From Octopus sinensis (taxonomy: Eukaryota): a DNA stretch of 64,000 nt. A model generated the notes under the pieces. It was not told the origin of the DNA. It was given only the letters and a program-made list of their open reading frames with translations, and made no database searches. A program made the position numbers and the translations under genes. Of the stretch, positions 2,275 through 38,680 are shown in pieces (within the stretch, counting starts at the first letter, position 1; each line of letters opens with the position of its first letter). The stretch spans positions 20,149,360 to 20,213,359 of the forward strand of contig NC_043019.1 of the NCBI RefSeq assembly GCF_006345805.1, in the 5' to 3' direction.

Positions 2275-4915
2275 ATGGTATAACTATCAGTTCCAAAATT
2301 GGGAGCTAAACCCTCCAAGATCTTCCAAATATATATCACCGCATATCTCTCTCATCTTCTTTCCAGGGAATAGAGATTCAGCCCCTTTAGCCTCTCCCAG
2401 TAGCCCATCTTTTGCATCGAGTCAATCTTCTTTGTGTATTGGTGCTGTATTACTTCCAGTTCCACAGTTTGTTTCACACTCTCTGGGGACCATAGTTAGG
2501 GGGCAGTAGTCCAAGCGATTGAGACTGAAAGTCTGCCATAGGAGTAAAAGGGCTTCCCTTTTCCTGGTTCTGGATGTCCTCAGAAACCATCTGCACACTG
2601 TTGCCATCTTGGTAACGTGCACATGGAATGTTGCATCATTGCTCATGTGAACCCCCAGGCAATTAGGAACCCAGAGGACATCATAAAACAGCAGAAAGAT
2701 CTGAACGAGAACAACATGCAGTTCAATGCTATGAAATTTCAGGCACTCCACAAGGGGCTAAACATAGAGGGGACAAACAAGTACAGACAAACGGATTAAG
2801 TCGATTATATCGACCCCAGTGCATAACTGGTACTTATTTAATCGACCCCGAAAGGATGAAAGGCAAAGTTGACCTCGGTGGAATTTGAACTAAGAACCTA
2901 AAGACAGACGAAATACCTATTTCTTTACTACCCACAAGGGGCTAAACATAGAGGGGACAAACAAGTACAGACAAACGGATTAAGTCGATTATATCGACCC
3001 CAGTGCATAACTGGTACTTATTTAATCGACCCCGAAAGGATGAAAGGCAAAGTTGACCTCGGTGGAATTTGAACTAAGAACCTAAAGACAGACGAAATAC
3101 CTATTTCTTTACTACCCACAAGGGGCTAAACATAGAGGGGACAAACAAGTACAGACAAACGGATTAAGTCGATTATATCGACCCCAGTGCATAACTGGTA
3201 CTTATTTAATCGACCCCGAAAGGATGAAAGGCAAAGTTGACCTCGGTGGAATTTGAACTAAGAACCTAAAGACAGACGAAATACCTATTTCTTTACTACC
3301 CACAAGGGGCTAAACATAGAGGGGACAAACAAGTACAGACAACGGATTAAGTCGATTATATCGACCCCAGTGCATAACTGGTACTTATTTAATCGACCCC
3401 GAAAGGATGAAAGGCAAAGTTGACCTCGGTGGAATTTGAACTAAGAACCTAAAGACAGACGAAATACCTATTTCTTTACTACCCACAAGGGGCTAAACAT
3501 AGAGGGAACAAACAAGTACAGACAAACGGATTAAGTCGATTATATCGACCCCAGTGCATAACTGGTACTTATTTAATCGACCCCGAAAGGATGAAAGGCA
3601 AAGTTGACCTCGGTGGAATTTGAACTAAGAACCTAAAGACAGACGAAATACCTATTTCTTTACTACCCACAAGGGGCTAAACATAGAGGGAACAAACAAG
3701 TACAGACAAACGGATTAAGTCGATTATATCGACCCCAGTGCATAACTGGTACTTATTTAATCGACCCCGAAAGGATGAAAGGCAAAGTTGACCTCGGTGG
3801 AATTTGAACTAAGAACCTAAAGACAGACGAAATACCTATTTCTTTACTACCCACAAGGGGCTAAACATAGAGGGAACAAACAAGTACAGACAAATGGATT
3901 AAGTCGAGTATATCGACCCCAGTGCATAACTGGTACTTATTTAATCGACCCCGAAAGGATGAAAGGCAAAGTTGACCTCGGTGGAATTTGAACTGACTGA
4001 CCCTGGGATCGTATTACCTTCTGGTTCAGTGTATTCCAATTTTAGTCTGGTGTTGGGCTGATTGTGGAGTGCCTGAAATTTCATAGCATTGAACTACATG
4101 TTGTTCTTGTTCAGATCTTTCTGCAGTTTTATGATGTCCTCTGGGTTCCTAATTGCCTGAAATACTTTTGTGTCATCAGCACCACTGGTCAGATTGGCTG
4201 ACTGTACCATGGAGGGCATTTCTGAGAGAGCCACCACAAACAGCAGTGGCCCCAATACAGTTCCCTGTGGGACTCCGCTGAGAATTGGTGTCTCTTCAGA
4301 GTGAGCAACATTGGCTACAATTGTCTGACTCCTACCCTTCAGAAAATCATGCAGCCACTCTCCCAGTTTCCCGGTTTCGCAGCTTGTGACATATCATGCC
4401 ATGATCAACCTTGTCGAAGGCCTTGACAAAGCCAAGGTATATCATGCCTACAGCTGACTGGTTTAGCTGTGGCTTCCATACCCAGTCAAAGTGCTGCAGC
4501 AACTGTGTGAGGATGGAAGCCCTGTTGCATGTTTGTGAGAAGGTTGTTTTCTTCTAGGAATGCAATCAGCCTTTTTCTGACAATGTGTTCCATTGTCTTG
4601 CTAACATGTGAGATCAGAGAGATGGGCCTGTAGGTTTTAGCATCTGCTCTGCTCCCTCCTTTATGGAAAGGGCATATTATACCCTCTTTTAGCATGTTGG
4701 GAAATTTACCACATGCAAGGAAACTCTGAAAGAGTATCTGCAGTGGCTTTGCAAGAGCCTTTTTACATGTCTTTAAGAGAACAGCCAGAAGTCCATCTGG
4801 GCCTGTTGCTAAGTTTGATCTCATCTCATCAATGGCTGATATTACATCCTCTTCTGTTATGTTGATATAATCGATGGTTGCCTCTTTGCTGAATAGATTC
4901 ATTACATTGAAAAAC
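2275..4915 (-). mobile_element. Decayed CR1/L2-type non-LTR retrotransposon RT region, interrupted by a SINE array
   Basis: PDGLLAVLLK...KGGSRADAKTYRPISL...QQGF, SGVPQGTVLGPLLF, ADDTK; resumes at 2658 with LGVHMSNDATF and frameshifted YWERLKGLNLYSLE. Confidence 0.85.
2748..3993 (-). repeat. Tandem array of about 6.8 x 184-bp SINE-body monomers
   Basis: ccacaagggg unit starts at 2748, 2932, 3116, 3300, 3483, 3667, 3851; copies nearly identical. Confidence 0.95.
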
Positions 4916-4989
4916 ACTTTTGGCTTGTTTATTTGCATATTTTCCAGTGGAGAAGTATGTATATATATTATGTGTGTGTGTGTATATAT

Positions 4990-5389
4990 CTCTTTCTCTC
5001 TTTTACTTGTTTCAGTCATTTGACTGCGGCCATGCTGGGGCACCGCCTTTAGTCGAGCAAATCGACCCCGGGGCTTATTCTTTGTAAGCCCAGTACTTAT
5101 TCTATCGGTCTCTTTTGCCAAACCACTAGGTGACGGGGATGTAAACACACCAGCATCGGTTGTCAAACAATGCTAGGGAGACAAACACAGACACACAAAC
5201 ACACACACATATATATATATATATATATGACAGGCTTCTTTCAGTTTCCATCTACCAAATCCACTCACAAGGCATTGGTCGGCACGAGGCTATAGTAGAA
5301 GACACTTGCCCAAGGTGCCACGCAGTGGGACTGAACCCGGAACCATGTGGTTGGTAAGCAAGCTACGTACCACACAGCCACTCCTGCGC

Positions 5390-9676: not shown

Positions 9677-10108
9677 GTGAGAGAGACAGACAGACAGAGA
9701 TATAAAGATAAAAGAAAAAATGATCATATTATGTATCAAACAGTTTCCTCTGGTTACTTCAACTAGCTACCTGTGTGTGTGTATTTATATATGTGTGTGT
9801 GTGTGTGTGCATATATCTATACCTATGTATATATATACACACGTGTATATACATACACATACACTTTGTTATACATTTTCATACACCGGTAAACTTTGCA
9901 TTCACTGTATATAGCTACAAATTGTGTTGCACAAGCAATTTGCTCCATGCATACCAAATGCAGAATCAACTTTATGCACATAATATATGAATAAAATGGA
10001 CAAAATCAGCAATGTATAAGCTGTCTGAATAAGCTTGCATGTCCAGGTATGCATGCTAATATCGAACAGTGAAAATGAGCATGCAACACTGCATTGATGA
10101 ATAAATAT

Positions 10109-10311
10109 TCTTTATTTGTGGATTAATGAGACAACCAATGGTTTCATGTGCAGGAATCTTCACAATTGTTCAAGTGTGTCACATGGAAGTGCTGGTGCTC
10201 ATCTATCCAAAAGGGAGACAAATACTAACACTTCTATGTGGTACACTTGGAAAATTGCGAAGATCTTTTCGCATGAAACTGTTGGTTGATTCATTAACCC
10301 ACAAATAAAGA
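10109..10311. repeat. 96-bp-arm imperfect inverted repeat (long hairpin)
   Basis: Arms 10109-10204 and 10216-10311, 22 substitutions, no indels. Confidence 0.9.
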
Positions 10312-10864
10312 AAAAATTCTGCAAGAGCAAAACAACCAGAGATTCAAACTGTTCACTTTTTACACAAAAAGAATCAAGCCACAAATCACTGTTACAATTA
10401 TAAATTAAATGATTTGAAAAATACACACATATACAAACATATATACACACACAATCATACATACATACACACATTTGATTACTGGTCCCTCTCAACAGCT
10501 GTTTCATAAAGATAAACACCATAAAATGTTAACTGCATAATTATGATGCATCATTAATTTATTTAAATTAAATTATATTATGTATTGCATTCCTGCAGTT
10601 ATGGAATTAATGATGTTTATCTTAATAAAACAACTGTTGAACACAAAGTAAAAACTATATATAAAATTTATGCTTTTTATGCATTTATGTTATATATGTA
10701 TATGTATATATATATTGATATTAATTTTGAGTATGTGTGTGTGAGTGCCTATATATGTATTTGTGTGTATATATATATGTGTATGTATATATATATATAT
10801 ATATGTATTTATATGTATACACATACATACACACAAATATGCACATGTACATATATTTGCATAG

Positions 10865-10899
<35 letters not shown>

Positions 10900-11388
10900 T
10901 AAGAGAGTGACCGGGTTTTTTATGCACTAAGCCACTTGGTGGTAAATGGATGTGCTATTAAATTAGTACCCAATTTTCTCACCCTTATCAGTTGAGTATA
11001 TATATGCATACAGTAACATTAAAACAGACACACATTCACTCACATATAGATACATAAATATTCTCGTACATATACGAACATACAAACAGAGAAAATGGAA
11101 AGTTTTCTTATGAAACAAAGCCAGGAGGCAGCTGTAATGATTTGAGGAGATCAGGAAGAAGTAGACTGAAATCATGCAGAACAGAAAAAGGGGCTTACAC
11201 ACCACAGTCAAAGCAATGTCAATCACGTATATTGATTGATTCTTTTGTGACTAGCACCGGGATATCAATCAGAGAAGGTTTAATCAAAATAGGGTCGATG
11301 GAGGAAAAAGAAGTTGCAAATTTGTCTCTCTTAGCAGCATTCTTCAAATGGTGAACATCATGATGGTTTTTACCATTTTAGTTTTATG

Positions 11389-11503
11389 TAATGAGATTTT
11401 TATAATTATAGTGTTAGTAATGAGATTTTTATAATTATAGTGTTAGTAATGAGATTTTTATAATTATAGTTGTTAGTAATGAGATTTTTATAATTAGAGT
11501 GTT
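11389..11503. repeat. 29-bp tandem repeat, about 4 copies
   Basis: taatgagatttttataattatagtgttag repeated. Confidence 0.9.
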
Positions 11504-11908
11504 TTAACCATTTAATGACACAAAAAAAAACCATTCAATTTATTTCTAATATATTTCATGAGGTGTCACAATATTTTCATCACACAACCACAATTTTATT
11601 AAGGACCTTGTGTGTGTGTGTTGTAATGTTGGTCCTTATGTCAAGTTGTAATAAAATCAATTTTACATTAGATTGAAGGATTGTTCATTACTTTTTGTAG
11701 AGTACCTATTTATTATTTTTTAACAAGAATAGTATTGACAGTAACTTTGAAGTTTTTCAGGCTCATCACAGTATGATGATGGCTTATCAAGCCAAAACTT
11801 TGAAGTCACTCTCAACAATATATATATATATCTAATGTAGGATAAAATTTTTTGAAAAAAACTCTATCAATGGCCAGCATATTAAAAAATACCTTTAAAG
11901 GTTAAATT

Positions 11909-12121
11909 TATAGACAACTTATAAATAAGGGCAAAAGAAAAAAATTCTAATACCAAATATGCCAAAAATAAGACAAATCGTCAATAACCATATAATTTAT
12001 CACTATTGTGATATAGTGATAAATAGTGCTTATGGTGATAAATTATATGGTTATTGACGATTTGTCTCTTTTCGGCATATTTGGCATTAGAATTTTTTTC
12101 TTTTGCCCTTATTTATAAGTT

Positions 12122-12128
<7 letters not shown>
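11909..12128. repeat. AT-rich palindrome with ~90-bp arms next to (TA)n
   Basis: acaacttataaataagggcaaaag... is mirrored by ...cttttgcccttatttataagttgt. Confidence 0.85.
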
Positions 12129-12157
<29 letters not shown>

Positions 12158-12320
12158 TAATCAAAGTATACATTACAACCAATCTTACTTACCAAACAGT
12201 TTTGCACAGGCTATCAGGTAATCAGATGATTATCTAATAACTGTGCTCATCAGCGTTGGCAAGTATATGGGGGAAAAAAATTACTATTCTTAGATGGCTA
12301 CATGTTTACACACACACTTA

Positions 12321-13555
12321 CAAGGTGTCCATAAATTATCTTTATGACTTCCACAATTTATCATATCTATTAAAGTTGAGATCCATCAATGAGCTTCTTT
12401 CTATGGTGTAAATAAACATTATTAAAGTTTTAATTTATCTACTGTGCTTTGATATCTAAATCCCTTTGATTTACCTTTAAATGTATTTATTATAATCCCT
12501 GACTTTTAATGAAATTGACAACACCACAAGAGGGAGCACAATGTGTATCCAGACATTCAGGTCCAGTGGAATTACCGTACAAAGAATGGAAAAGAACCTC
12601 TAACTCATGTAGGCATTTATGCCTGGCGTAAAAGGTTTATGGAAACAGAAAGTGTCTTACAGAAAAAGGGGCTGTGTGCTGTGTGACAGAGGACATCTGT
12701 GGAAGATGTTGAGTGAATTTCATTATAGTCCTACTAAGCCCATTCATGCTGCATGTAGACAATTAAGTTTACCACAGTCCAAACTTTTACTGTTTTGCAC
12801 AAGAAACTGATGGTTTTATGCTTATAAAGTACAACTTTTGTGAGCACTACAGCCAGATGACAAACCCCAAAGGATACAATTTGCAGTGGACACGATAACT
12901 CTTCCTTTGAAAGATTCGTTCCAGTGAGAAAGCAACATTTCATGTGTCAGGAATGATAAATAAGTACAGCATCTGGAGAACTGGAAAGAAACAATCCAGC
13001 AGTCAAATGTTTGGTGCAGCCTTTTGTTAGATTGAGTGATTGGCTCATTTTTCTTAGAAGAAGAAGCAAATATTTGCTACACTTATAAGAAATACTTGTA
13101 CTGAAGTTGCACCACCTACAACCAACAGTTATTTCCCAACAATATGGTGGATTGTTACATTGGGGATCGAGTGTTTGAGAGTATTTTTAAAGAAACTTTC
13201 CCCCACCAGTGGATTAGGAGAGGTGGTCCAGTTCTCTGGTCACCTAAGGTATGAGATATAACCCCTCTGGACTCCTTTATATGGGTCTACATTAAAGATA
13301 GAGTATATTGCACAAAAGTTCAAAACTTCAATGATATGAAGGAGAATATGTGCCAAACCATATCCAACATTGATGAAGGGATTCTTAGTCAGAAATTGAG
13401 TATTGTCTAGATGTGTTGCATGCGACCACTGGATCCTATTGGAAGTGTTCTGGATTTTCTTTGTTTACCTATGTTTTGCCATAAATTCTGTTGAGTTAAC
13501 CTTATTTTTTTTTTCTGAATTTTTTAAAGTATAAAGGTAATTAATGGACAGCTTA
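12321..13555 (+). mobile_element. Full-length decayed Tc1/mariner transposon
   Basis: TA-flanked ~26-bp TIRs (caaggtgtccataaattatctttatg / ataaaggtaattaatggacagctta). Broken transposase with T.QEGAQCV...ETESV at the N-terminus and FPHQWIRRGG...W.P...DITPLDSFIWVYIKDRVY at the C-terminus. Confidence 0.85.
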
Positions 13556-13782
13556 TATATATATCAGAACAAAACAAATTGAAGAAAGAAAAAGTAAAGT
13601 AGAGCAGAGAAATAATAAGGGGAGTGGGATTGGAAAAAAAGACAAGAAAAGTTGTAAAAGACAAACAGATGAGAGACAGACTGCAAATGAGAGACCGACA
13701 AAAATGCATTTGACTGGATGTCAGCTACAAAGTCTGATCAGTGATACAACTTCATTATCTCCCTTTGTTGAATTGGTGGGAT

Positions 13783-14787
13783 TTATAGGAATTTTGGTGG
13801 GAAAACTGCTGCCAAAGTTACACAAATGCTACAGAGAGCAAACATCATATTCTGGAAAGATAAAAGAGAGAGAATATGGAAAAATTGAAGCATTTAATAG
13901 AAATGTAAATGTTGATATACATACATAGGAATTTATATGTGTATATCATCATCATCATTGTTTAACGTTTGCTTTCCATGCTGGCATGGGTTGAACGGTC
14001 TGACATGGAGCTGACCAGTAGTGAGCTGTCCAGGCTCCAGTTGTTTGTTAAGGTATGGCTTCAATGGCTGGATACCCTTCCCTATGCCAACCACTTGAAA
14101 GAGTGTGCTGGGTGCTTTTTACGTGCCACCTGCACAGGTGTATTTATGCAGCACCGGCAATTCTACTATATGGCTCAGAAACCTGGACGTTATCAAAGAA
14201 GCTTGAGAGGTGGTTGGATGGAACTTACACTCGCCTCCTTATGAGAGCTCAAAATCTCTCGTGGAAGCCTCATCCAACCAAAGTGCAAATATTTGGGAAA
14301 CTACCACCTGTGTCATCTCTTGTGAAAGGTAGGAGAGTCCAGTTTGCTGGACATTGTTGTAGAGCTGAAAACAAGGTAATTTCTACTCTTCTCCTCTGGA
14401 AGCCATCTGCTCGCGATACCAGAGGACGCACACTCTCCTACCCTGATGTAATCTCCAGGGATACAGATATCCAGCAACAGGACTTCCATAATGCTATGAT
14501 GGACTGTGAAGTCTGGCATAGCATGGTAAATTCCACGGTCGAACAATGATGATGATGACGGATGCTTTTATGTGGCACTTGCACCTGAAAGGACACACCT
14601 GTATATGTGGAAGGCAGCAATTTTAATTAGCTTGATGTGTCTTATCAAGTACAGCAAATTCCCACATCTCCCGGTCTCTTGTCATTTCCTCAGCAAGGCC
14701 CAGCGTCCATTGATCTTATCTCCAAAGATCTCATCACTTCGTCTCACATCTTCCAGGGCTTACCCCTTCTGTGTGTGTGTGTGTATG

Positions 14788-14844
<57 letters not shown>

Positions 14845-14845
14845 C

Positions 14846-14904
<59 letters not shown>

Positions 14905-15589
14905 GGTGTGTGGCTTAGTGGTTAGGCTGTTGAACTCACAATTACTAGATCATGGGTTTGATTCTCAGACTAGGCGATAGATTGTTTTCCTGTGCAAAAT
15001 ACTTCATTTGATGTTGTCCATTCCCCCTTTCATTCAGGGAGGAATGTTGACCTGCTTGTGGCTAAAATTATGCAAAGTGCATTGTGACTATACATACTTA
15101 TATATATAAATATAATTAGAAAAAAAACACCTTTTATCAATTCAAAATGAACAATTAAATTACACCATCTAGAAAATTACATATAATAGAAATATTAAAA
15201 TTAAAATAACAATAATATACTTAATTTTAATATTTCTATTATATGTAATTTTCTAGATGGTGTAATTTAATTGTTCATTTTGAATTGATAAAAGGTGTTT
15301 TTTTTCTAATGTATATATGTATATATATAATATATTAAATTAGAGACAAAACCACTATTATGCAAATCAAACAAAGAAAGACTTAAGCCAATACATAAAA
15401 TAATTTATATAATTAAATTTAATTATATAAATTATTTTATGTATTGGCTTAAGTCTTTCTTTGTTTGATTTGCATAATAGTGGTTTTGTCTCTAATTTAA
15501 TATAATATAATATTTTACTATAAAATTGGATTCAATCCTAAATCTGATTTTTCCCTGTAAATTTGGATTTATTCCCTAATATTTATTAT

Positions 15590-15649
<60 letters not shown>

Positions 15650-17725
15650 TGAAATTTGATTTAGTATTTCTAAATTGAATTTTTCCCTGTAAGTTAGGAA
15701 TAATGTTCCCTCAAATAATTATAATATATATATGACAAAAAAGCTCCTTACCAATACAAGAACGCTTGCAGAATTCTCTCGCTGGTTAGTGACGTAACTT
15801 TTACTGCTGGTTAATTCATTTGTTTGGTTTGGTGACTCGGTGCCCTCGATGTGAGCTACAGCAGCAGCAGATTCCCCACTCTTACCATCTTGGATATAGA
15901 TGTCATGTGACACTTTTTCCTTCTTTTGTCCCACCACTGCTGCCATCTGTTTCGCTTTTGTTGGACTCAACGTGACGCTGATGTTATCGGCCTGTTCTGG
16001 CTGGACAGTAACATTGACACTATCTGAAATGATCACAAAAGTAAACATTAACCCCAAATACACAAACATAAAGCAATTAACCCTTTCATTACCATACTTC
16101 TGTTGGAACACACTGCTTTTGTTTCAATTAATTTTGAAAATAATGAAGAATTTAGGCGTAGGAGTGGCTGTGTGGTAAGTAGCTTGCTTACCAACCACAT
16201 GGTTCCAGGTTCAGTCCTACTGCGTGGAACCTTGGGCAAGTATCTTCTACTATAGCCTCGGGCTGACCAAAGCCTTCTGAGAGGATTTGGTAGATGGAAA
16301 CTGAAAGAAGCCCGTCGTATATATGTATATATATATGTGTGTGTTTGCGTGTCTGTGTTTGTCCCCCCAACATCACTTGACAACCAATGTTGGTGTGTTT
16401 ACATCCCCGTAACTTAGCGATTCGGCAAAAGAGACCGATAGAATAAGTGGTAGGCTTACAAAGAATAAGTCCTGGGGGTCGATTTCCTCGACTAAAGGCA
16501 GTGCCCCAGCATGGCCGCAGTCAAATGACTGAAACAAGTAAAAGAGTCAAAAGAGAGAGCAAGGCCATTAAGATTTACGAGACGGTGGCAGGAACAAAAG
16601 TTAATCGAGAAAAGTCAGTCGTCTTGCAGCTTGGCACCTGGAGAGGCAAGTCGATGCTTCCTGACAGCGTCGTGTGACGTTGGACAGAGGGTCTGATTAA
16701 GTTGCTAGGAGTTTGGTTTGGACCAGACCTCCAAATAGAGAAGAACTGGGCCAAGGTATCGAGCAGGGTGACCCACATAGTCAAGACCTGGTCTTGGCGA
16801 TGGCTATCCCTGAAAGAGAGGGTGGAGGTAGCCAATGTGTTCATCACATCGGTCATCGCCTACCACCTGACCATCGTTCCTTGCCCTGATTCATGGTTGA
16901 TCAAGCTGGAAAGACAGCTCTTCCACTTCTTGTAGAAGGGCTCGAAACCGCTTGTGACAACTGTCAAAGGGTGGGCTAGGGATGCCTTGGCTATTGATGC
17001 GCAGACATGCGCTGAGGTTGCGGCATCTGTGGCTCTACCTAGATGGTGAACGGGTGTGGTCTCTGCTAACGAAACGGATGAATATTGAGGGCAACCTAGT
17101 AACGAGTTGATCTAGCCTGATCTCAGTGAGTGAGGCTGGTGGACAATAATGCTATCGAGAGGGAAGCCCCAAAACTGCATATTCTCTCCTGATGACCCCC
17201 CTAAGCTTGCTAGCATCTGGTATGATGAGTTGGTAGCACTTGCATCTGTAAGTTGTTTGCAAATATATATCATCATCATCATTTAGCGTCCGCTTTCCAT
17301 GCCAGCATGGGTTGGACGGTTCAACTGGGGTCTGTGAAGCCAGAAGGCTGCATCAGGCCCAGTCTGATCTGGCAGTGTTTCTACGGCTGGATGCCCTTCC
17401 TAACGCCAACCACTCTGTGAGTGTAGTGGGTGCTTTTTACGTGCCACCCGCACAGATTCCAGACGGAGCTGGCAAACGGCCACGAACGAATGGTGCTTTT
17501 ACGTGCCACCAGCACGGGGGCCAGGCGAGGCTGGTAACGGACACGAACGGATGGTGCTTTTGAGAGAGAGAGAGAGAGACAGACAGAAAGACAGGCAGGC
17601 AGATGGTGTACGGAGTATAAAGAAGTACTTTAATACAAACCAGCATAACAGCAACAGCTGTAGTAACAGCAGATGTAGAGCCAGAGAAGAGCCAAGTAAC
17701 TTATGTTGTACTTCTTCAAATCCAT
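13783..17725 (-). CDS. Unannotated 141-aa secreted, GPI-anchor-like/membrane glycoprotein (3 coding exons: 17641-17725, 15752-16023, 13783-13851)
   Basis: ATG in aatATGG context with upstream in-frame stops in the same exon (acceptor ttttccag, exon starts 17782). Donors G|GTTTGT and TTG|GTAAGG; acceptors atttcag and tctttccag. Phases 1 and 0 match; total 426 nt ending in TAA. Hydrophobic N-terminus ([18 protein letters not shown]) and C-terminus ([21 protein letters not shown]). Confidence 0.7.
14150..14558 (+). mobile_element. RTE-clade LINE 3' fragment
   Basis: [14 protein letters not shown]...[10 protein letters not shown] followed by a (GAT)n tail. Confidence 0.8.
15115..15504. repeat. 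Two adjacent AT-rich palindromes (15115-15310; perfect 174-bp palindrome 15331-15504)
   Basis: Direct reverse-complement comparison; a relative of the first lies at 28700-28900. Confidence 0.9.
16555..17100 (+). mobile_element. L1/Tx1-clade LINE RT C-terminal fragment
   Basis: [33 protein letters not shown]. Confidence 0.8.
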
Positions 17726-18019
17726 ATTGTTGTTGTTGTTAATGTCGTCTCAGAGGGAATTTTGCAGAAACTATTGGTCTCACTGGAAAAAAAACAGAAA
17801 CAATAAATAGATTGAAATTTGGTTGGGTGGGTGGGTGGGGATGACTTTTAACTGTGACTATAAATATATATAAGTCGAAACAATTTGTTGGCCTTTTACA
17901 GTTTTTATAATTATTTATATAATATTGTTATGTGATATATTATATTCATAGTATTTAATGTTGAATTCCAATAGAATATCTCTATATTCAATTTATCTTT
18001 ATATATATATATATATATA

Positions 18020-18320
18020 GTGACGTATATTTGCCATTTAAATATGGCTAAACCCTAAGGGTGGATGCTACTGTAGTTTGTAGCCCCAGGGGGACACCTC
18101 TTCCAGCTGGCTTTAGACACACTTACTGTGCCCTCTCAGTGTTTGCAAAGGGAAGCCATCCTTCCCATCTTCACCCTTTTCAAACATTGATAGGACACAT
18201 AAAGTGTGTCTAAAGCCAGCTGGAAGCTGGAAGCTGGAAGAGGTGTCCTCCTGGGGCTACAAACTATAGTAGCATCCACCCTTAGGGGTTAGCCATATTT
18301 TAATGGCAAATGAACGTCAC
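18020..18320. mobile_element. MITE-like element with ~85-bp terminal inverted repeats
   Basis: gtgacgtatatttgccatttaaatatggctaaaccctaagggtggatgc is mirrored at 18240-18320; partial copy near 47490-47640. Confidence 0.75.
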
Positions 18321-18955
18321 GATGTGTTGCAGCTACTGTTTATAACTCGCTCTAAGATTTATTATATATATTGTGGGGTGCAAAGAGAAGAGCACCATAC
18401 AAGGGTGACCGTTGACAGAGCAGCTAACTGGCTTCCTTGCCAGTGGCACATAAAAGGGCACCATTCGAGTGTGATCATTACCAGTGTCGCCTTACTGGCA
18501 CTTGTGCCCGTGCTTCTTCAGCTGAATATACCAGATAAGCACATAAATACAGATATATATTTATACTGAACATACATTATACTTACATGTAAGTATAACA
18601 TACGTTCTGTATATATATATATATATATATATACATATATATATGTATGTATGTATGTGCTTATCTGGTATATTCAGCTGAAGAAGGCAGAACTTCTCTG
18701 AAGCAAAACCAGAAATCCAGGATCTTGAATTATCCAGTAAAATCTTTTTTGCTAGTTTATTTTGTCTCTCTGTCTTCTCTTCTGGTGTGATATGAACATT
18801 TACGGTGGTTTTTGACTGCTATTTTAGCATGGTGGTATCTCTCAGATACCCTAATTTATAGTTTTAAATAATTATTACCTTTGTATGGTATTTGTTCCCA
18901 TGCTGGCCACTTGATAAGATCAATATTTAAATATCGATATTATCCTTATTTATAA

Positions 18956-19000
<45 letters not shown>

Positions 19001-19739
19001 TATATATGTATATATATAATGGGTGTCCATTTAGTGGTCATCCCTCTTATATATATATGTTTTATAATTTTTCTGAATCCTAATATTTTTCTATATACCA
19101 GGCCACTGGTTTTAAATTGATATTAATCAAATTAATATTCAATTTTTCACCCTTATTATTTAAATTTGAATAACCATGTTCTCTAACCAGCAAAATTCAC
19201 TGCAGAAAATTATTTTTCTGCAGAATTATTTCCAGTAATTTGGCCCGTCAAAACGAAGAGTTTTGAAATTTAACCCCAAATGTAATTGGTAGAACTATAT
19301 ACATGTTCAATCTCATACGGACGACTCATGTATAGTTCTGCAAATTATATTTTGCTATGACGATCACACTGATGAATTGCAGACATTTACATAAATATTA
19401 CGTAAGTGATTAATTTTTATATTTTGTATCTTTTCATTTGTCTTGCTCACTTACATTCTGGCGTTTGCTGAATTTTCTTGAGAACAATCTATTGTTAGTG
19501 GTCAGACCATATGGGGTCTACATCTAGCATAATGGATGTCCTCTTACTAGTCACCCCACTTATATATATATAAACAAAATAAGCAACAAGGATATCCAGA
19601 GGTAATGCAGTACGATCGTTTCATGTGACTCCATTTAATTGAACAATGTAAATATTACATCAGTTTTAAAATGTATAGCAATCTTCAGGAATGTTGGACA
19701 ACAAGCATTGACTGAAAGGTGACCATCTGACAAAACCAC

Positions 19740-21925
19740 TCAAGATCCTGAAGAAAAAGGAAAATATAATGACCCTAGAAAAAAATAGCCAGGAAAATTA
19801 TGTCAAAACCAAATTTGAAGACCACATATTTGCTGAACAACACAGAAAATCTATCATTGAAATGAAGCAGGAAGTTCTGAATGAGCTTGCAGTTGTAGGG
19901 CATACAAATATGAATGATAGGGAACCACTCCATAAACTATCAAATGCACACCAACATAAACACAAAACAAACATAAAACACAAATAAAAGTTGGCAACTG
20001 TATTACACAAGAAATCATACAACAACTAAAACCCGATCTTAATAAGATAAATGAAATTATTTACTCTGTTGCTAAGGTAATCGAAAGACGCTGTTTAACA
20101 TCCAAAAAGCCAGCAATATCAAATTCGAAAAGGAAATCAAACTGGAGGAGTAGAATTGAAACTGAGATTGAAATATTGCGAAGGGAGATATCAATATTAA
20201 CAGAGCTAATCTCTGGAAATAGTTTAAGATCAAGAAAAGGCAGGAAGATTGTGAGAAAATATGAACTCTCAATAAGAGAAGAACTAATGTCAGTGAAATA
20301 AAGTTCAAGCAAAAGCTCAGAGAATACACAGATTTGAGAAAAGAATCAAATACAAGCAAAATTAGATGTTCAAATCCAATGCCAAATCATTTTACAGGGA
20401 AATAGGGAAAGAAAAAATAACCATTGAAAATCCACCCCTAATGGAAGAAATTGAGAACTTTTGGAAAGGGATCTGGAGTGATGAGAAACCATACAATGAA
20501 AATGCAGACTGGATCAAACGCACCCAAGATACCTACAAAAATCTACAAGAACAGGTATGGGAAGACATCTCAATCACCGACCTAAGAAGAGCACTAATGA
20601 AGGCTCATAAGTGGAAATCCCCTGGTATTGATAGAGTACCAAATCTCTGGCTCTCATCACTCTCGTCCGCACAAAAAATTTTAGTAATACTATTTAATAG
20701 TATTATGAAAGACCCGGTAAAAACTCCCCATTGGATGGCAAGTGGTATTACTTACCTCCTCCCCAAAAATAACAAAACCAAAGACCCAAAAAGCTACTGG
20801 CCTATACCATGTTTGTCTACTACCTATAAGATTCTAGTGGAGAAAACATATACATTTATGAAAGAGAATAACCTCTTTCCCACTGAACAAAAAGGATGCA
20901 AAGATCAGCTCCTAATTAATCGCATGATCCTTAAGAACTGACGTAACAAGCACAGAAATCTCAGCTCTTCATGGATTGATTATAAAAAAGCCTTTGACAG
21001 CATACTACATTCATGGATTCTGAAATTGCTGGACATTTCCAAAATTTCTCCTGTGATTTCAGATTTTTTCAAGTATATGTCACTATGGAACACAAAGCTC
21101 CAATTATATCATTCTAATGGAGTATTGTGCTCAAACAACATTAGCATAAACTGTGGAATTTTCTAAGGTGATTCACTTTCACCACAAATTTTCTGCATAG
21201 CACTAAAACCACTCTCAAGTGAACTGAATAGAACAGGGTATGGCTACAAAATTGACAACAGGAAAATAAGCCATCTATTTTATATGGATGATTTAAAACT
21301 ATATGGCAAAGATGATGAAGAGCTTGAAGGACTACTATATCCTGAGAAAGGATTCAGTGATGATATCGGGATGGAGTTTGGCCTTGAAAAGTGTGCCAAA
21401 GCCACTTTTAAGAAAGGAAAATTGGTAAAGTCAAGTTCAATTAAATTAGATGTCGAAACAGTAATAAAGGGACTTGAGCAGGAACAAACCTATAAATACC
21501 TAGGAATAAACGAAGGCTCTGGTATCCAGCATGCAAGCATGAAAGAGAAGGTTAGGAAAGAATGTTATAGAAGAGTTCGAGCAGTCCTGAAGTCTGAGCT
21601 GAATGCATATAATAAGGTGTTAGCCATAAATTCCTTAGTAGTCTCAGTTGTTCTTTATAGCTTCAATGTGCTTAACTGAAATACCAGTGAAATAATGAAA
21701 ATTGATAGAAAAATCCGCAAGCTACTGACTTGTAATAAAATGTACCATCCAAAGGCAGACATGGATCATCTTTACCTTCCCAGAGCTCAGGGAGGTCGAG
21801 GCTTGATCCAGCTTGAACTTACATATGAAAGCACCACAATTGAACTGGCCAAATACCTTGAAGCAACCAATGATTGGATGCTAAAACTTGTTGAAAAACA
21901 TGAAAAACCGAAAAAACTTCACTGA
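19740..21925 (+). mobile_element. Decayed R4/Dong-clade non-LTR retrotransposon (reverse transcriptase)
   Basis: WKSPGIDRVPN.W, EQKGCKDQLLIN, WIDYKKAFDS, G(stop)GDSLSP, HLFYMDDLKLY, DIGMEFGLEKCA; several stops and frameshifts. Confidence 0.9.
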
Positions 21926-21929
21926 AATG

Positions 21930-22325
21930 AATAAAAGAATGCAGACTACCTCATTGACAAATGATAGGGACCTTCTCTTTGTGGCTGGTGACTTCAATAG
22001 ACATATTGGACAACATGCAGGGGGCTTCCATGGCATACATGGAGGCTATGGGCATGTGGCCAGAATGGATGAGGATAGCTGTGGGAAAAAGTGCCACACC
22101 CTAGCAGTTGAGGAAACCTGTGGAAGAGATAGACCCTGGAAGACCTGGGGGTGAGGTGGTGAAGCACGACCATTGACAATTAGGCCTCACCGAGGCAATG
22201 ACTAGTGACCGAGACCATTGGAAATATGCAGTGCGTGAGAAGACCCAGCAAGCCAAGTGAGATAATAACCCGTGGCCTATGCCAGGGGTGCAACCAGCCC
22301 ACTTATGCGTATGATGATGATGATG
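21930..22325 (+). mobile_element. Internally deleted RTE element
   Basis: VAGDFNRHIG (APE endonuclease) joined to GRDRPWKTW (3' end) and a (TGA)n tail. Confidence 0.7.
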
Positions 22326-22336
22326 ATATATATGAT

Positions 22337-22636
22337 ACTAGCAGTATCGCCCGGCGTTGCTCGGGTTTGTAAGGAAAATAACTATATAAGCATTTTTAGA
22401 GAGTTACTTCCCTTATATAATAGCCAAAAAAGCATTAAAAATGGGGAAAAATGATGGTAAATTTTTTTTTAAATCGTAGACTCATCGTAGACACGCGCTA
22501 ATACCCAGAAGGGCTCGATATGAATCGCGACTATAAGATACCCGGTTTTGGTTAAACTGCACCGCAAAATGTGGGAGTAGTTAGGAATCTAAATCGTAGG
22601 AGACAGACACACAACTTCACTTTTATATATAAAGAT
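22337..22636 (+). mobile_element. Non-autonomous Helitron-like element (second copy 53189-53588)
   Basis: Starts ACTAGCAGTATCGCCCGGCGTTGCTCGGG (subterminal hairpin), ends TTTTATATATA(A/T)AGAT; two related copies in the window. Confidence 0.6.
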
Positions 22637-23436
22637 ATATATAGATATACTGAAAATGCTGTTTTGTCACTTCTATTGTAGTTTTGACAAAATAACTGTT
22701 AAAATCGAACCTCACTCTTCAAAACTTGCATTAAGGATAAGGAACAAGATAAAGTTTCTACTTTCTTTTATAGCAAGTTGATGCAGGTAGTTTACCCCGT
22801 CCCCTTCCGACTTTTAGTTCATGCAATTGAAAAAACTGCATTATTTATCGGATGACCCAATATATATATATATATATATATCATCATCATCATCATGATA
22901 TATATATATATGCATGTATATATATATTATATATATATATGTATATATGTATGTATATATATACATATATATGTATGTATATGTAAGTATTTATATATAT
23001 ATATATAATATCATCATCATCATCATCGTCATTTAGCGTCTGTTTTCCATGCTAGCATGGGTTGGACGGTTCTACTGGGGTCTGTGAAGCCAGAAGGCTT
23101 CATCAGGCCCAGTCAAATCTGGCAGTGTTTCTACGGCTGGATGCCCTTCCTAACGCCAACCACTCCGTGAGTGTAGTGGGTGCTTTTTACGTGCCACCCG
23201 CACAGGTGCCAGACAGAGCTGGCAAACGGCCACGAACGGATGGTGCCTTTTATGTGCCACCGGCACAAGGGCCAGGCGAGGCTGGCAACGGACACGAAAC
23301 GGGGCGGTGCTGGCAACGGTCGTGAAACGGAAGGTTCTCTTACATGCCGCCGGCACTGGTAACACATCTGCAATTTCCATTGATCGATTTCCATTCTGAT
23401 CCTCACTTGCCTCGAGGGCATATAATATATATATAT

Positions 23437-28478: not shown

Positions 28479-28983
28479 TATGTATGTATATATATATAGC
28501 TGAAAAAAGATATACGAATCAAAATTTAAAATATAAAAGGTGTAGGTGAAAATAACACAGAGACATTTTAAGTAACTCTAAGACATCTTCATATGATTTT
28601 AAAATCATTTTATTAAATTCCTTCTAAATTGAAATATCTCAGATTTACTTCTGTGCTATTTCCACTTCTACCTTTTACATATATATATATATATAAATAA
28701 ATTAGAAAAAAAACACCTTTTATTAATTCAATATGAAAAATTAAATTACACCATCTAGAAAATTACATATAATAGAAAGATTAAATATAAGATAAAAAAT
28801 ATAACGATGATTAAGTAATGTGCAAAATAATAAATAAAACGTATATATTTGGTAGAATTTTTCATTTTGAATTGATAAAAGGTGTTTTTTTTTCTAATTT
28901 ATATATATATTATATTTTGTGAAATTTGATTTAGTATTTCTAAATTAAATTTTTCCCTATAAGTTTGGAATAATATTCCCTCA

Positions 28984-34684: not shown

Positions 34685-35050
34685 AGCTATGATTTTGAGG
34701 AACCAAATGACATGGTGTGGCCATATTATTCGAATGGCAGACGAACGCATGCCGAAACAGCTGTTTTATGGCGAGCTTGCAGAGGGGAAATGCTATTGGT
34801 ATAAACCTAAAAAATGGTTTAAGGATGGCATAAGGTCTACTATGAAGTCACTTGGAATAAATTCATTGAAGAGGCCAGGATAACACATGTAAGACTCAAA
34901 AGAGATCTAAGGAAGAATGTAATGATCGACAATAACCTTTTTATGTGCACAGACTGTGACAGACCATGCCTATCTTTTGCTGGGATCAAATCTCATCTGT
35001 GAACCCATGGAAAACAAACCTCCGCCAACTATTCTGCCTATATGTCTGTG
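34685..35050 (+). mobile_element. RTE LINE 3' fragment
   Basis: WCGHIIRMADERMPKQLFYGEL. Confidence 0.75.
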
Positions 35051-35059
35051 CACACCTTT

Positions 35060-36553
35060 GAATGCATATACATACATATATATATACATACATACATATC
35101 TATATACATACATACATACATACATATATATACATACATATATACATACATATATATACATATATACACATACATATACATACATATATACACATACATA
35201 TACATACATACATATATATACATACATATATACATACATATATATACATATATACACATACATATATATACATACATATATACATACATATATATACATA
35301 TATACACATACATATATATACATACATATATATACATATATACACATACATATACATACATACATATATATATATACATATATATACATACATACATATA
35401 TATACATATATACACATACATATACATACATATATACACATACATATACATACATATATACACATACATATACATACATACATATACATACATATACATA
35501 CATACATATATATACATATACATACATACATATATATAACAATACATACATACATATATATACATATATACACATACATATACATACATATACATACATA
35601 CATACATATATATATACATACATATATACATATATATATACATACATACATATATATATACATATATATATACATACATACATATACATACATACATACA
35701 TATATATATACATATATATACCATATATATATATATACATACATATATATACATATACATACATATATACATATATATATATACATACATATACATATAT
35801 ATATATACATACATATACATATATATATACATACATATACATATATATATATACAATATACACATATATATACATACATATACACATATATATATACACA
35901 TATATATATATACGTACAATACACATATATATATATACATACATATACACATATATATATATACATACATATACACTATATATATATACATACATATACA
36001 CATATATATATATACATACATACATATACACATATATATATATACATACATATACTATACATACATATCATATTATATATACATACATATACACTATATA
36101 TATACATACATATACACATATATATATATACATACTATACACATATATATATATACATATATATACACATATATATATAACATACATATACACATATATA
36201 TATATACATACATATACATATATATTATACTACATACATATACACATATATCTATATATACATACACATATATATATATACATACATATACACATATATA
36301 TATATACATACATATACATATATATATACATACATATACATAATATACATATATATATACATACATATACATATATATATACATATATATATACATACAT
36401 ATACATATATATATATTACATACATATACATACATATACATATACATACATATACATACATACATATATATATACATACATATACATACATATACATATA
36501 TACATATACTACATATATATATACATACATATATATATACATACATATATATA

Positions 36554-36591
<38 letters not shown>

Positions 36592-37492
36592 GACATATAT
36601 ACATATATATACATATATATACATATATCATACATATACATATATATACATATATATACACACATATATACATATATATACATATATACATTACATAATA
36701 TATACTACATATACATATATATATACATACATATACATACATATACATATATATATATATTACATACATATATAATATTATACATATATATATACATATA
36801 TATACATACATAATACATACATATATACATACATATATACATACATATACACATACATATATATATATGCATATATATATATCCATACAATATACATACA
36901 TATATATATATGCATATATATATAATTACATACATATATACATACATATATATATATGCATATATATATATACATACATATATACATACAATATATACAT
37001 ATATATATACTATATATATATACATATACATATAATACTATGCATTATATATATACATATATATACTATATGCATAATATATATATATGCCATATATAAT
37101 ATATACATATATATATACATATATAATAATATATATACATATATATATATATATACATATATATATAATATACATATATATAAATAATATATAATATATA
37201 ATATACATACATAATATTACATACATATAATATATACATGACATATATATACATACATAACATATATCAAACATATACATACATATTATACATACATACA
37301 TATAACCTACATATATATATTACTACATATATATATCATACATATACATACATATAACATACACATATATACATACACATATATACATAGTATCATACAT
37401 ATATACATACACATATATACATACACATATATACATACACATATATACACCTACATATATACATACACATAATAATACACATATATACATAC

Positions 37493-37525
<33 letters not shown>

Positions 37526-37724
37526 ATACATACATACATATACATACATACATATATATATATATATACTACATAATACATATACATACAATATATATAT
37601 ATATATAACATACATTATATATATATACATACATATATATATATATACATACATATATATATATACATACATATATACATACACACATAATATATATACA
37701 TATACACACACACATACATACATA

Positions 37725-37755
<31 letters not shown>

Positions 37756-38625
37756 CATATATCACCGTGATCACCGTGACCGACCAGACCATCAGATGTT
37801 GCTGCACATCGCTGGTCACAATGCGCTTCGCATTATTTTAGCCTTCAAATGACGCCACCCCGCTGGCGAAGCGAGCAGGCCAACAGAAGAGTGAGAGAAA
37901 GTTGTGGCGAAGGAGTACAGCAGGGATCGCCACCACCCCCTGCTGGAGCCTCGTGAAGCTTTTAGGTGTTTTCGCTCAATAAACACTCACAAGGCCCGGT
38001 CTGGGAATCGAAACCGCGATCCTAACCACTGGGCCATTGCGCCTCCACATACATATATACATACATATATATATACATATATATATACATACATACATAT
38101 ATATACATACATACATATATATACATACATACATATATATACATACATATATACATACATATATACATACATACATATATACATACATACATACATATAT
38201 ACATACATACATATATACATACATACATATATACATACATACATATATACATACATACATATATACATACATACATATATACATACATACATATATACAT
38301 ACATACATACATACATATATACATACATATATATATATATACATACATACATACATACATATATACATACATATATATATATACATACATACATATATAC
38401 ATACATACATATATACATACATACATATATACATACATATATATATATATACATACATACATATATACATACATACATATATACATACTACATATATACA
38501 TACATATATATATATATACATACATACAATATATATACATACATACATATATACATACATACATACATCATATATATATACATACTATATATATAATACA
38601 TACATACATATATATATTACATACA

Positions 38626-38663
<38 letters not shown>

Positions 38664-38680
38664 ATACATATATATAATAC
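35060..38680. repeat. Very long compound (TA)/(TACA) microsatellite, interrupted by a SINE at about 37760-38045
   Basis: Direct reading; explains the spurious Y/I/H/T-rich ORFs. Confidence 0.95.

What the first reader, a model, noticed from the sequence alone, without database searches (positions are those of the whole stretch)
13783..17725. Hidden three-exon gene for a 141-aa signal-peptide, GPI-signal-like glycoprotein that the ORF track does not show
Seen: the phase-consistent splice chain gives [141 protein letters not shown]. Each exon supplies one module: a Cys-rich signal peptide, a Cys-free S/T-rich ectodomain with three N-X-S/T sequons (N32, N42, N94), and small residues NSAS followed by a hydrophobic tail. 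Established: a small-residue omega site plus a hydrophobic C-terminus is the GPI-attachment signature. I recognise no family, so this may be a lineage-specific cell-surface protein (inference).
Basis: partly seen in the sequence, partly recalled or inferred. Interest (0 to 1): 0.75.

Follow-up and report, generated by a model that had tools for sequence, protein, structure and literature searches.

The report
Small cephalopod-only surface glycoprotein gene
The three-exon gene is real and conserved, but it is already in the public Octopus sinensis annotation as "uncharacterized protein LOC115223720"; it encodes a small, probably lipid-anchored, cell-surface glycoprotein found so far only in octopus and cuttlefish-type cephalopods.

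Summary
The splice chain is exactly as described: minus strand, 17725-17641 / 16023-15752 / 13851-13783, two GT-AG introns, 426 nt, 141 aa. Its product is 100% identical over its full length to RefSeq XP_029650261.1 (LOC115223720, Octopus sinensis). Annotated 141-aa orthologs exist in O. bimaculoides (96%) and O. vulgaris (99%). The gene is therefore hidden only from a prokaryote-style ORF list.

It is under coding constraint. O. sinensis vs O. bimaculoides gives dN/dS 0.18. The exons carry 2.8% mismatches and no indels, against 6.3% and 4.4% in alignable flanks. Against O. vulgaris the exons differ at 1 of 426 sites, versus 3.7% in non-coding DNA.

Distant homologs (33-40% identity) are spliced transcripts from Sepia pharaonis and another RNA-seq series, plus an unidentified genome contig. 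They share the architecture, both intron positions and phases, and an invariant core ([16 protein letters not shown]). Pfam, PDB and the literature gave nothing, and there are no non-cephalopod relatives.

Best reading: cleaved signal peptide, acidic disordered Cys-poor glycosylated ectodomain, GPI anchor. A short-tailed type I membrane protein is the main rival. Function is unknown, and I found no octopus transcript here. Interest is low.

The parts
17750..17752 (-). In-frame TGA stop 27 nt upstream of the start codon. The ORF cannot extend 5' within this exon.
17641..17725 (-). Coding exon 1: ATG plus 28 codons and 1 nt. It encodes the predicted signal peptide [28 protein letters not shown]. 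The predicted cleavage after A28 coincides with the exon boundary.
   Evidence: Identical to the RefSeq model. 96.5% and 98.8% nt identity in O. bimaculoides and O. vulgaris, without indels.
16024..17640 (-). Intron 1 (phase 1, GT-AG, 1,617 nt). It holds two tandem SINE-like units and TE-derived ORF fragments.
   Evidence: The homologous phase-1 intron sits at the same codon position in the cuttlefish-type genome contig L018.
15752..16023 (-). Coding exon 2 (272 nt): the whole ectodomain (D29-S115) plus the first four tail residues (VLVL).
16007..16015 (-). N32-V-T sequon, the only N-glycosylation sequon conserved in the Sepia-type homologs (N23-I-T there).
15875..15943 (-). Conserved core, aa 56-78 ([23 protein letters not shown]). 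A57-V59, E64, K65, S67-K76 and G78 are invariant in all six family members.
15764..15775 (-). N112-S-A-S115: run of small residues, the candidate GPI omega site (SSAA / NSAA in the homologs).
   Evidence: rule from established knowledge of GPI signals
13852..15751 (-). Intron 2 (phase 0, GT-AG, 1,900 nt). It holds TA microsatellites, two long palindromes, a SINE-like unit and a retroelement-like ORF.
   Evidence: A homologous phase-0 intron lies just before the hydrophobic tail in L018.
13783..13851 (-). Coding exon 3: [22 protein letters not shown] plus TAA. This is the bulk of the C-terminal hydrophobic tail, either a GPI-signal peptide or a TM anchor.

Best explanation
This is the protein-coding gene LOC115223720 of Octopus sinensis. 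It has three coding exons and belongs to a small orphan family seen so far only in coleoid cephalopods.

Proposed mechanism:
1. Exon 1 encodes a cleavable signal peptide that takes the protein into the ER. Cleavage is predicted after Ala28, at the exon 1/2 junction.
2. The roughly 85-residue ectodomain is acidic (pI about 5), Cys-free, predicted disordered and S/T-rich. It is N-glycosylated at least at the conserved N32, and probably O-glycosylated on the S/T-rich stalk.
3. The C-terminal hydrophobic peptide is removed by the GPI transamidase at N112/S113 and replaced by a GPI anchor.
4. This leaves a small glycopeptide on the outer leaflet of the plasma membrane. Its invariant [10 protein letters not shown]-centred motif is the likely interaction epitope.

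Shown: the gene model, its conservation and purifying selection, the conserved architecture and intron positions, and transcription and splicing in cuttlefish-type relatives.

Inferred: signal-peptide cleavage, glycosylation, the GPI anchor, and any role in surface recognition or adhesion.
For: **Gene model.**
- The spliced product is 100% identical, at 100% coverage, to XP_029650261.1.
- The annotated CDS span equals 13783-17725.
- 141-aa orthologs exist as XP_014782255.1 (O. bimaculoides) and CAI9739385.1 (O. vulgaris).
- All four splice sites and the frame are intact in all three species.

**Selection.**
- O. sinensis vs O. bimaculoides: 7 synonymous and 5 non-synonymous changes, dN/dS 0.18; binomial p=0.005.
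- Exons show 2.8% mismatch and 0 gaps, against 6.3% and 4.4% gap columns in alignable non-coding DNA (p=0.003).
- O. sinensis vs O. vulgaris: 1/426 exon differences against 3.7% in non-coding DNA (p=1.7e-6).

**Distant homologs.**
- P0007 (140 aa) comes from 6 RNA-seq contigs, including SRR3011300, which is Sepia pharaonis.
- P0006 (139 aa) comes from 8 RNA-seq contigs. Both have complete ORFs with upstream in-frame stops.
- P0008 is the exon-2 ORF on a genome contig.
- Intron 1 (phase 1, in the codon after the signal-peptide Ala, three residues before the NxT) and intron 2 (phase 0, just before the tail) are at homologous positions.

**Architecture.**
- N- and C-terminal hydrophobic segments occur in all full-length members.
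- Small residues (NSAS/SSAA/NSAA) precede the tail.
- In the Sepia-type proteins the tail is a textbook GPI signal: omega S-S-A, a 7-8-residue spacer, a 15-residue hydrophobic end and no cytosolic residues.
- The tail evolves much faster (10/22 identical) than the ectodomain (87/99) between the two decapodiform sequences, as expected for a cleaved signal.
Against: - No octopus transcript or junction read was seen. The Logan-derived protein set gave no octopus member, so expression and splicing in Octopus rest on the annotation pipelines and on conservation.
- No trained predictor (SignalP, NetGPI, DeepTMHMM) was available. The signal-peptide and GPI calls are rule-based.
- In the octopus protein the hydrophobic stretch starts right after NSAS with almost no polar spacer, is 21 residues long, and is followed by PPKFL with one Lys. 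That also fits a TM helix.
- The AlphaFold2 model is uninformative (pLDDT 47).
- Only six sequences define the family, so statements on distribution are limited by database coverage.
Confidence: 0.6

Rival explanations
1. Same gene and same secretory entry, but the C-terminal hydrophobic segment is a permanent transmembrane helix. The product would be a type I single-pass membrane glycoprotein with a minimal cytosolic tail (PPKFL), similar to small sialomucin-type membrane proteins.
For: In Octopus the segment V116-F136 is 21 residues with a high mean hydropathy (KD19 = 2.3). It starts directly after NSAS without a clear polar spacer, and is followed by a 5-residue tail containing Lys139.
Against: The Sepia-type homologs have only 15-17 moderately hydrophobic, G/S/T-containing residues ending 3 residues from the C-terminus, with no basic flank. 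The tail is the least conserved part of the protein (45% vs 88% identity). Small residues are conserved immediately upstream.
Confidence: 0.27
2. Secreted peptide or prohormone precursor. The ectodomain would be released and cut at basic sites (Q-K62-K63-E-K) to give bioactive peptides, one including the conserved [10 protein letters not shown] segment.
For: A signal peptide, small size, a KK pair just upstream of the invariant motif in Octopus, and an invariant short motif inside an otherwise fast-evolving protein.
Against: The dibasic site is not conserved: the Sepia-type sequences have AAQHEK. There is no flanking basic site after the motif and no Gly-Lys/Arg amidation signal. A conserved C-terminal hydrophobic tail is not a feature of prohormones.
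Confidence: 0.08
3. Not a functional gene: a fortuitous open frame and splice-like sites that ab initio predictors picked up in three closely related genomes.
For: Long open stretches are common in this window (28 of 130 or more codons). The three Octopus species are close relatives, so shared ORFs alone are weak evidence.
Against: Substitutions and indels are depleted specifically in the exons and dN/dS is 0.18. Homologous spliced mRNAs with complete ORFs occur in 14 RNA-seq assemblies of decapodiform cephalopods. Intron positions and phases are the same and a 10-residue block is invariant.
Confidence: 0.03

Closest known systems
RefSeq LOC115223720 (XP_029650261.1 / UniProt A0A6P7TMN8), with orthologs LOC106877760 (O. 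bimaculoides XP_014782255.1) and O. vulgaris CAI9739385.1, all 'uncharacterized/hypothetical'
   Same: Identical protein (100% identity and coverage) and an identical CDS span. The orthologs are 96% and 99% identical, with the same three coding exons.
   Different: Nothing differs; this is the same gene. The public records carry no function, domain or family name.
Vertebrate small GPI-anchored glycopeptide antigens (CD24, CD52). This is an analogy from my own knowledge, not homology.
   Same: The layout is alike: a signal peptide, a short Cys-free S/T-rich heavily glycosylated ectodomain with no globular fold, an omega site of small residues, and a hydrophobic C-terminal signal.
   Different: There is no sequence similarity (no hits). 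The mature cephalopod peptide is longer (about 85-95 aa) and carries a strictly conserved 10-residue motif. GPI anchoring is untested here.
Small type I sialomucin-like membrane proteins, such as podoplanin-type (analogy, own knowledge)
   Same: A signal peptide, a disordered acidic O/N-glycosylated ectodomain, a single C-terminal hydrophobic segment and a very short tail.
   Different: There is no sequence similarity. The homologs' tails are too short and too weakly hydrophobic for a stable TM helix, and lack a basic cytosolic flank.
FAM186A PQQAQ repeat (Pfam PF20869), the only non-cephalopod hits of the exhaustive search
   Same: Octopus residues 28-58 ([24 protein letters not shown]) resemble the LTPEQAQALGVTLTPQQAQ repeat. 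Hit E-values are 1.8e-9 and 4.2e-9, from scores summed over 17 and 9 matched stretches.
   Different: The octopus protein does not match PF20869, even at E up to 10. The QPEQ segment is absent from the Sepia-type homologs. FAM186A proteins are about 2,400-2,500 aa, with dedicated N- and C-terminal domains. I judge this to be repeat-amplified compositional similarity.

Membership tests
Annotated gene LOC115223720 (Octopus sinensis) and its Octopus orthogroup | Same protein sequence and same genomic CDS span | tested here: met
   100% identity and coverage to XP_029650261.1. The locus L001 gene span is identical to window 13783-17725.
Annotated gene LOC115223720 (Octopus sinensis) and its Octopus orthogroup | Orthologs at the syntenic position with the same exon structure | tested here: met
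   Exons map colinearly in L002 and L003 with intact GT-AG sites. The flanks are colinear with O. vulgaris over about 20 kb.
GPI-anchored proteins | N-terminal cleavable signal peptide | tested here: inconclusive
   A hydrophobic N-terminus and a (-3,-1) motif (C-Y-A|D; T-F-A|G in Sepia-type) are present. This is rule-based only; no SignalP was available.
GPI-anchored proteins | Omega, omega+1 and omega+2 small residues, followed by a short spacer and a hydrophobic C-terminus with no cytosolic domain | tested here: met
   This is met clearly in the Sepia-type members: S-S-A-A, a 7-8-aa spacer and a 15-aa tail. In Octopus, N-S-A-S is present but the spacer is short and hydrophobic, and a PPKFL end follows.
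GPI-anchored proteins | Actual lipid anchoring (PI-PLC release, dependence on the GPI transamidase) | not testable with these tools
   This needs a bench experiment.
Type I single-pass membrane proteins | Hydrophobic helix of about 20 residues followed by a basic cytosolic flank, conserved across the family | tested here: not met
   Octopus fits: 21 aa and one Lys in a 5-aa tail. The Sepia-type members have 15-17 aa with no basic flank, and the segment is poorly conserved.
FAM186A / PQQAQ repeat (PF20869) | Match to the Pfam model above the gathering score, together with FAM186A/B N- and C-terminal domains | tested here: not met
   No Pfam hit at E up to 10 for the octopus protein or at E up to 0.01 for P0006/P0007.
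Ly6/uPAR three-finger GPI proteins | 8-10 conserved cysteines forming the three-finger fold | tested here: not met
   The mature octopus ectodomain has 0 Cys and the Sepia-type have 1. There is no Pfam hit.
Neuropeptide / prohormone precursors | Conserved mono- or dibasic processing sites flanking the conserved peptide | tested here: not met
   The KK of Octopus is replaced by QH in the Sepia-type sequences, and no basic site follows the motif.

The most novel reading that the evidence does not exclude
LOC115223720 would be the octopus representative of an undescribed, coleoid-cephalopod-restricted family of GPI-anchored, intrinsically disordered surface glycopeptides. The family's invariant [10 protein letters not shown] motif has been held fixed since octopods and decapodiforms split (about 270 Myr by my recollection of published estimates). 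That would suggest a lineage-specific recognition or adhesion ligand, possibly tied to a cephalopod innovation.
Probability: 0.45. Interest if true: 0.4.

Novelty: already known. Interest (0 to 1): 0.2.

Why it matters

Biologically, it is one of many taxon-restricted cephalopod genes without a function. The modest additions here are:
- a link between the Octopus gene and expressed cuttlefish-type homologs;
- conserved intron positions;
- evidence of purifying selection;
- a sharply conserved 10-residue motif;
- a family-level argument for GPI anchoring.

If the protein proved to be a lineage-specific surface recognition molecule, it would interest cephalopod cell and neurobiology. Nothing here points to a new kind of mechanism.

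Tried and rejected
- **Pfam.** Scans of the octopus protein (E up to 10) and of P0006/P0007 found nothing.
- **PDB.** A sequence-profile search found nothing at E up to 1.
- **AlphaFold2.** Run on the 6-sequence alignment, it gave mean pLDDT 47 and pTM 0.24, with only the two terminal helices. I did not run fold search, because a low-confidence model gives meaningless matches.
- **Exhaustive HMMER (1.84 billion representatives).** Besides P0006, the only hits were two FAM186A proteins matching residues 28-58. I rejected these as repeat-amplified similarity (the segment is missing in the Sepia-type homologs).
- **Profile searches.** Two searches of the 5.8-billion-protein set added only P0007 and P0008. 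No mollusc outside cephalopods appeared.
- **Paralogs.** tblastn of family members against the window and the orthologous loci found none.
- **Literature.** Searches for the accessions, LOC ids and the motif found nothing. The SRA/ENA ids of P0006 and P0008 could not be tied to a species. Only SRR3011300 could, as Sepia pharaonis.
- **Rfam.** Nothing on 12000-19500.
- **Neighbour gene.** I placed the neighbour gene by synteny instead.
- **Prohormone reading.** Rejected because the dibasic site is not conserved.
Full report
**1. The observation**

The window is eukaryotic, AT-rich and repeat-laden DNA. On the minus strand, the segments 17725-17641, 16023-15752 and 13851-13783 join into a 426-nt frame.

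- Both introns are GT-AG with good contexts: CTG|GTTTGT, TTTCAG|AT, TTG|GTAAGG and a pyrimidine tract followed by CCAG|AA.
- The first intron is phase 1 and the second is phase 0.
- The ATG has A at -3 and G at +4. It is preceded by an in-frame TGA at 17752-17750.

The claim that the ORF track does not show the gene is mostly right. Exon 2 does sit inside a listed 130-aa ORF at 15719..16111(-). Exons 1 and 3 are too short to be listed.

An open stretch of this length is not remarkable here. The window holds 28 stretches of 130 or more codons outside a microsatellite, against about 2 expected from a first-order Markov model. Most lie in transposon debris. The case for a gene must therefore come from elsewhere.

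**2. Identity**

A search of about 5.8 billion proteins with the spliced product returned one cluster at 100% identity and 100% coverage. It is XP_029650261.1, 'uncharacterized protein LOC115223720 [Octopus sinensis]'.

- The encoding locus lies on chromosome record CM016881.1 of GCA_006345805.1.
- Its CDS span of 3,943 bp is base-for-base the window interval 13783-17725.
- The same cluster holds XP_014782255.1 (O. bimaculoides, LOC106877760, UniProt A0A0L8GDR4) and CAI9739385.1 (O. vulgaris). Both are 141 aa, at 96% and 99% identity.

It is hidden only from a prokaryote-style ORF list.

**3. Is it a real coding gene?**

I mapped the three exons in the O. bimaculoides and O. vulgaris loci. All splice sites and the frame are intact. 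The introns differ greatly in length: the gene spans 13.1 kb in O. bimaculoides, 3.9 kb here and 3.2 kb in O. vulgaris.

*O. sinensis vs O. bimaculoides*
- There are 12 substitutions in 426 nt, 7 synonymous and 5 non-synonymous.
- dS is 0.084, dN is 0.015 and dN/dS is 0.18.
- The excess of synonymous changes has binomial p=0.005.
- Residues 46-121 carry five synonymous changes and no replacement.
- In the alignable blocks around the exons, coding columns have 2.8% mismatches and no gaps. Non-coding columns have 6.3% mismatches and 4.4% gap columns (Fisher p=0.003).

*O. sinensis vs O. vulgaris*
- The exons differ at 1 of 426 sites with no indel.
- 5.1 kb of introns and flanks differ at 3.7%, with 1.9% gap columns (p=1.7e-6).

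The depletion of change is exon-specific and frame-aware. That is what purifying selection on a protein looks like.

**4. Distant relatives and gene structure**

An exhaustive HMMER scan of 1.84 billion representatives found one further small protein, P0006 (139 aa, E=9e-4), and two giant repeat proteins. Profile searches seeded with P0006 added P0007 (140 aa) and P0008 (109 aa), and nothing else, even at E up to 10.

- **P0007** is encoded complete on six 1-2 kb contigs assembled from RNA-seq runs. One run, SRR3011300, is listed as Sepia pharaonis whole animal in PMC5541922.
- **P0006** is encoded on eight RNA-seq contigs of the series SRR27666063-81. I could not determine the species. It is 76% identical in nucleotides to the S. 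pharaonis transcript.
- **P0008** is the exon-2 ORF, reading into the intron, on a 225-kb genome contig from ENA ERZ21867824.
- The transcripts carry in-frame stops upstream of the ATG, so their ORFs are complete.

I aligned the S. pharaonis transcript to that genome contig.
- Exon 2 starts after ...TTTCAG, so intron 1 is phase 1, in the codon after the signal-peptide Ala. That is three residues before the NxT sequon, the same place as in Octopus (YA|D-S-V-NVT versus FA|G-C-I-NIT).
- Intron 2 is phase 0 and sits immediately before the hydrophobic tail. It is one codon away from the octopus position relative to the conserved Glu.
- Exon 1 was not found within the 10 kb of contig held upstream.

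The family therefore includes spliced, expressed mRNAs in decapodiform cephalopods and shares its intron-exon plan with the octopus gene.

**5. Architecture**

All full-length members have the following parts.

- **A hydrophobic N-terminus.** It ends in a small-x-small motif: C-Y-A|D in Octopus and T-F-A|G in the Sepia-type. The odd Cys/Tyr richness of the octopus signal peptide is Octopus-specific.
- **An NxT sequon.** It lies a few residues into the mature chain and is the only conserved sequon. N42 and N94 are Octopus-only.
- **An invariant core.** Within AVV-x4[15 protein letters not shown], residues S67-K76 are identical in all six sequences, although overall identity is only 33-40%.
- **An acidic stalk.** It is rich in S/T/P/A and variable in length.
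- **A run of small residues.** These are NSAS, SSAA or NSAA.
- **A C-terminal hydrophobic segment.**

The predicted mature octopus peptide (29-112) is about 9 kDa before glycosylation, with pI 5.2 and no Cys. AlphaFold2 on the six-sequence alignment gave only the two terminal helices and a low-confidence, disordered ectodomain (pLDDT 47).

**6. GPI anchor or transmembrane helix?**

The established GPI signature is as follows (my knowledge of the big-PI/PredGPI-type rules):
- small residues at omega and omega+2;
- a spacer of about 6-10 residues;
- a hydrophobic stretch of 12-20 residues running to the C-terminus.

The Sepia-type proteins fit this closely: S115-S-A117, spacer ARMGVAMS, then LGCVFVAAAIGMTQL. 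They have no basic or cytosolic residues.

The octopus protein is more ambiguous. Its hydrophobic run (V116-F136, 21 residues, KD19 2.3) begins right after NSAS and is followed by PPKFL.

Two family-level facts favour a cleaved signal.
- The small-residue site is conserved while the tail sequence is not.
- Between P0006 and P0007 the tail is 10/22 identical, against 87/99 for the ectodomain.

I put GPI anchoring at roughly 0.6 and a short-tailed type I membrane protein at roughly 0.27.

A prohormone reading is unlikely. The octopus KK is not conserved and the C-terminal tail is.

**7. Comparison with what is known**

- No Pfam family matches.
- No PDB relative matches.
- No paper mentions the accessions or the motif.
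- The two large hits are FAM186A proteins, with PF20869 PQQAQ repeats and FAM186A/B N- and C-terminal domains.
  - They match only octopus residues 28-58, through 9-17 summed repeat stretches.
  - The octopus protein does not hit PF20869.
  - The QPEQ segment is missing in the Sepia-type homologs.
  - I reject homology.

Functionally, the nearest analogues are small GPI-anchored glycopeptides such as CD24 and CD52, or small sialomucin-type type I proteins. This is a resemblance of layout only, recalled from memory.

**8. Limits**

- I found no octopus transcript. The only octopus records are genome-derived models.
- Signal-peptide, glycosylation and GPI statements are rule-based.
- Restriction of the family to coleoid cephalopods is what the databases show. 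It depends on which mollusc proteomes they hold.
- There is no paralog in the window or in the orthologous loci.

**9. Verdict**

What is new here is limited to four things: the link to expressed cuttlefish-type homologs, the conserved intron plan, the selection tests, and the invariant motif with the family-level case for a GPI anchor.

Noticed in passing
window 17429-17561 (intron 1), 14111-14130 (intron 2) and 16 other sites across the window: A dispersed SINE-like element with the core GGTGGCACGTAAAAAGCACC occurs 18 times in 64 kb at up to 3 mismatches (0 expected). Intron 1 holds two tandem 62-nt units. There is no Rfam match in 12000-19500.
   Followed up: partly
window 15326-15509 and 15115-15310 (intron 2): Two adjacent near-perfect palindromes. 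One has 92-nt arms with no loop (99% complementary). The other has 90-nt arms with a 16-nt loop (100%). The second has a related copy at window 28673-28915 and a degraded copy in the O. vulgaris intron, so it looks like a foldback or MITE-like element. The first has no copy in the O. vulgaris or O. bimaculoides loci. It could be a recent foldback or an assembly artefact.
   Followed up: partly
window about 9060 down to below 3148, minus strand: By synteny with the O. vulgaris locus (L003 17732-23216), where a gene with a product of 318 residues or more and a PF00153 Mito_carr hit is called, a mitochondrial-carrier gene lies about 4.5 kb downstream of LOC115223720 on the same strand. I did not map its exons in the window.
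   Followed up: partly
window 2748-3994: A tandem array of 6.8 copies of a 184-bp unit at 99% identity. Related units occur at about 43212-43476, 49283-49699 and 57544-58012, so this is a dispersed satellite or TE-internal repeat.
   Followed up: no
window 35065-38674: A 3.6-kb degenerate (ATAC)n / CATATATATACATA microsatellite. It explains the GC trough (0.19) and the strongly negative GC skew (-0.63). It also explains the cluster of long overlapping pseudo-ORFs on both strands, for example 34956..36698 at 580 aa.
   Followed up: yes
window 14055-14549 (+) in intron 2; window 4486-5166 (-): These are transposon-derived ORFs. The 164-aa ORF antisense in intron 2 contains an LLYGSETW-type motif, which I recall from non-LTR retrotransposon reverse-transcriptase C-terminal regions, but it has no Pfam hit at E up to 0.01. 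The 226-aa ORF at 4486-5166 has a weak RVT_1 hit (E=0.0014, below the gathering score).
   Followed up: partly
window 17782-17784, about 57 nt upstream of the ATG: A strong acceptor-like site, T-rich tract then CCAG|TG, lies just upstream of the start codon. The mRNA may therefore have an additional non-coding 5' exon. The AACAACAA-type sequence immediately before the ATG is also present in the cuttlefish-type transcripts (...AACAACAAA-ATG).
   Followed up: no
L002 (O. bimaculoides) 10086-14785 and 15058-23069, compared with the window introns: Intron sizes differ several-fold between close species. Intron 1 is 4.7 kb in O. bimaculoides, 1.6 kb here and 1.0 kb in O. vulgaris. Intron 2 is 8.0, 1.9 and 1.8 kb. 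The exons are unchanged in length. This probably reflects lineage-specific repeat insertions.
   Followed up: no
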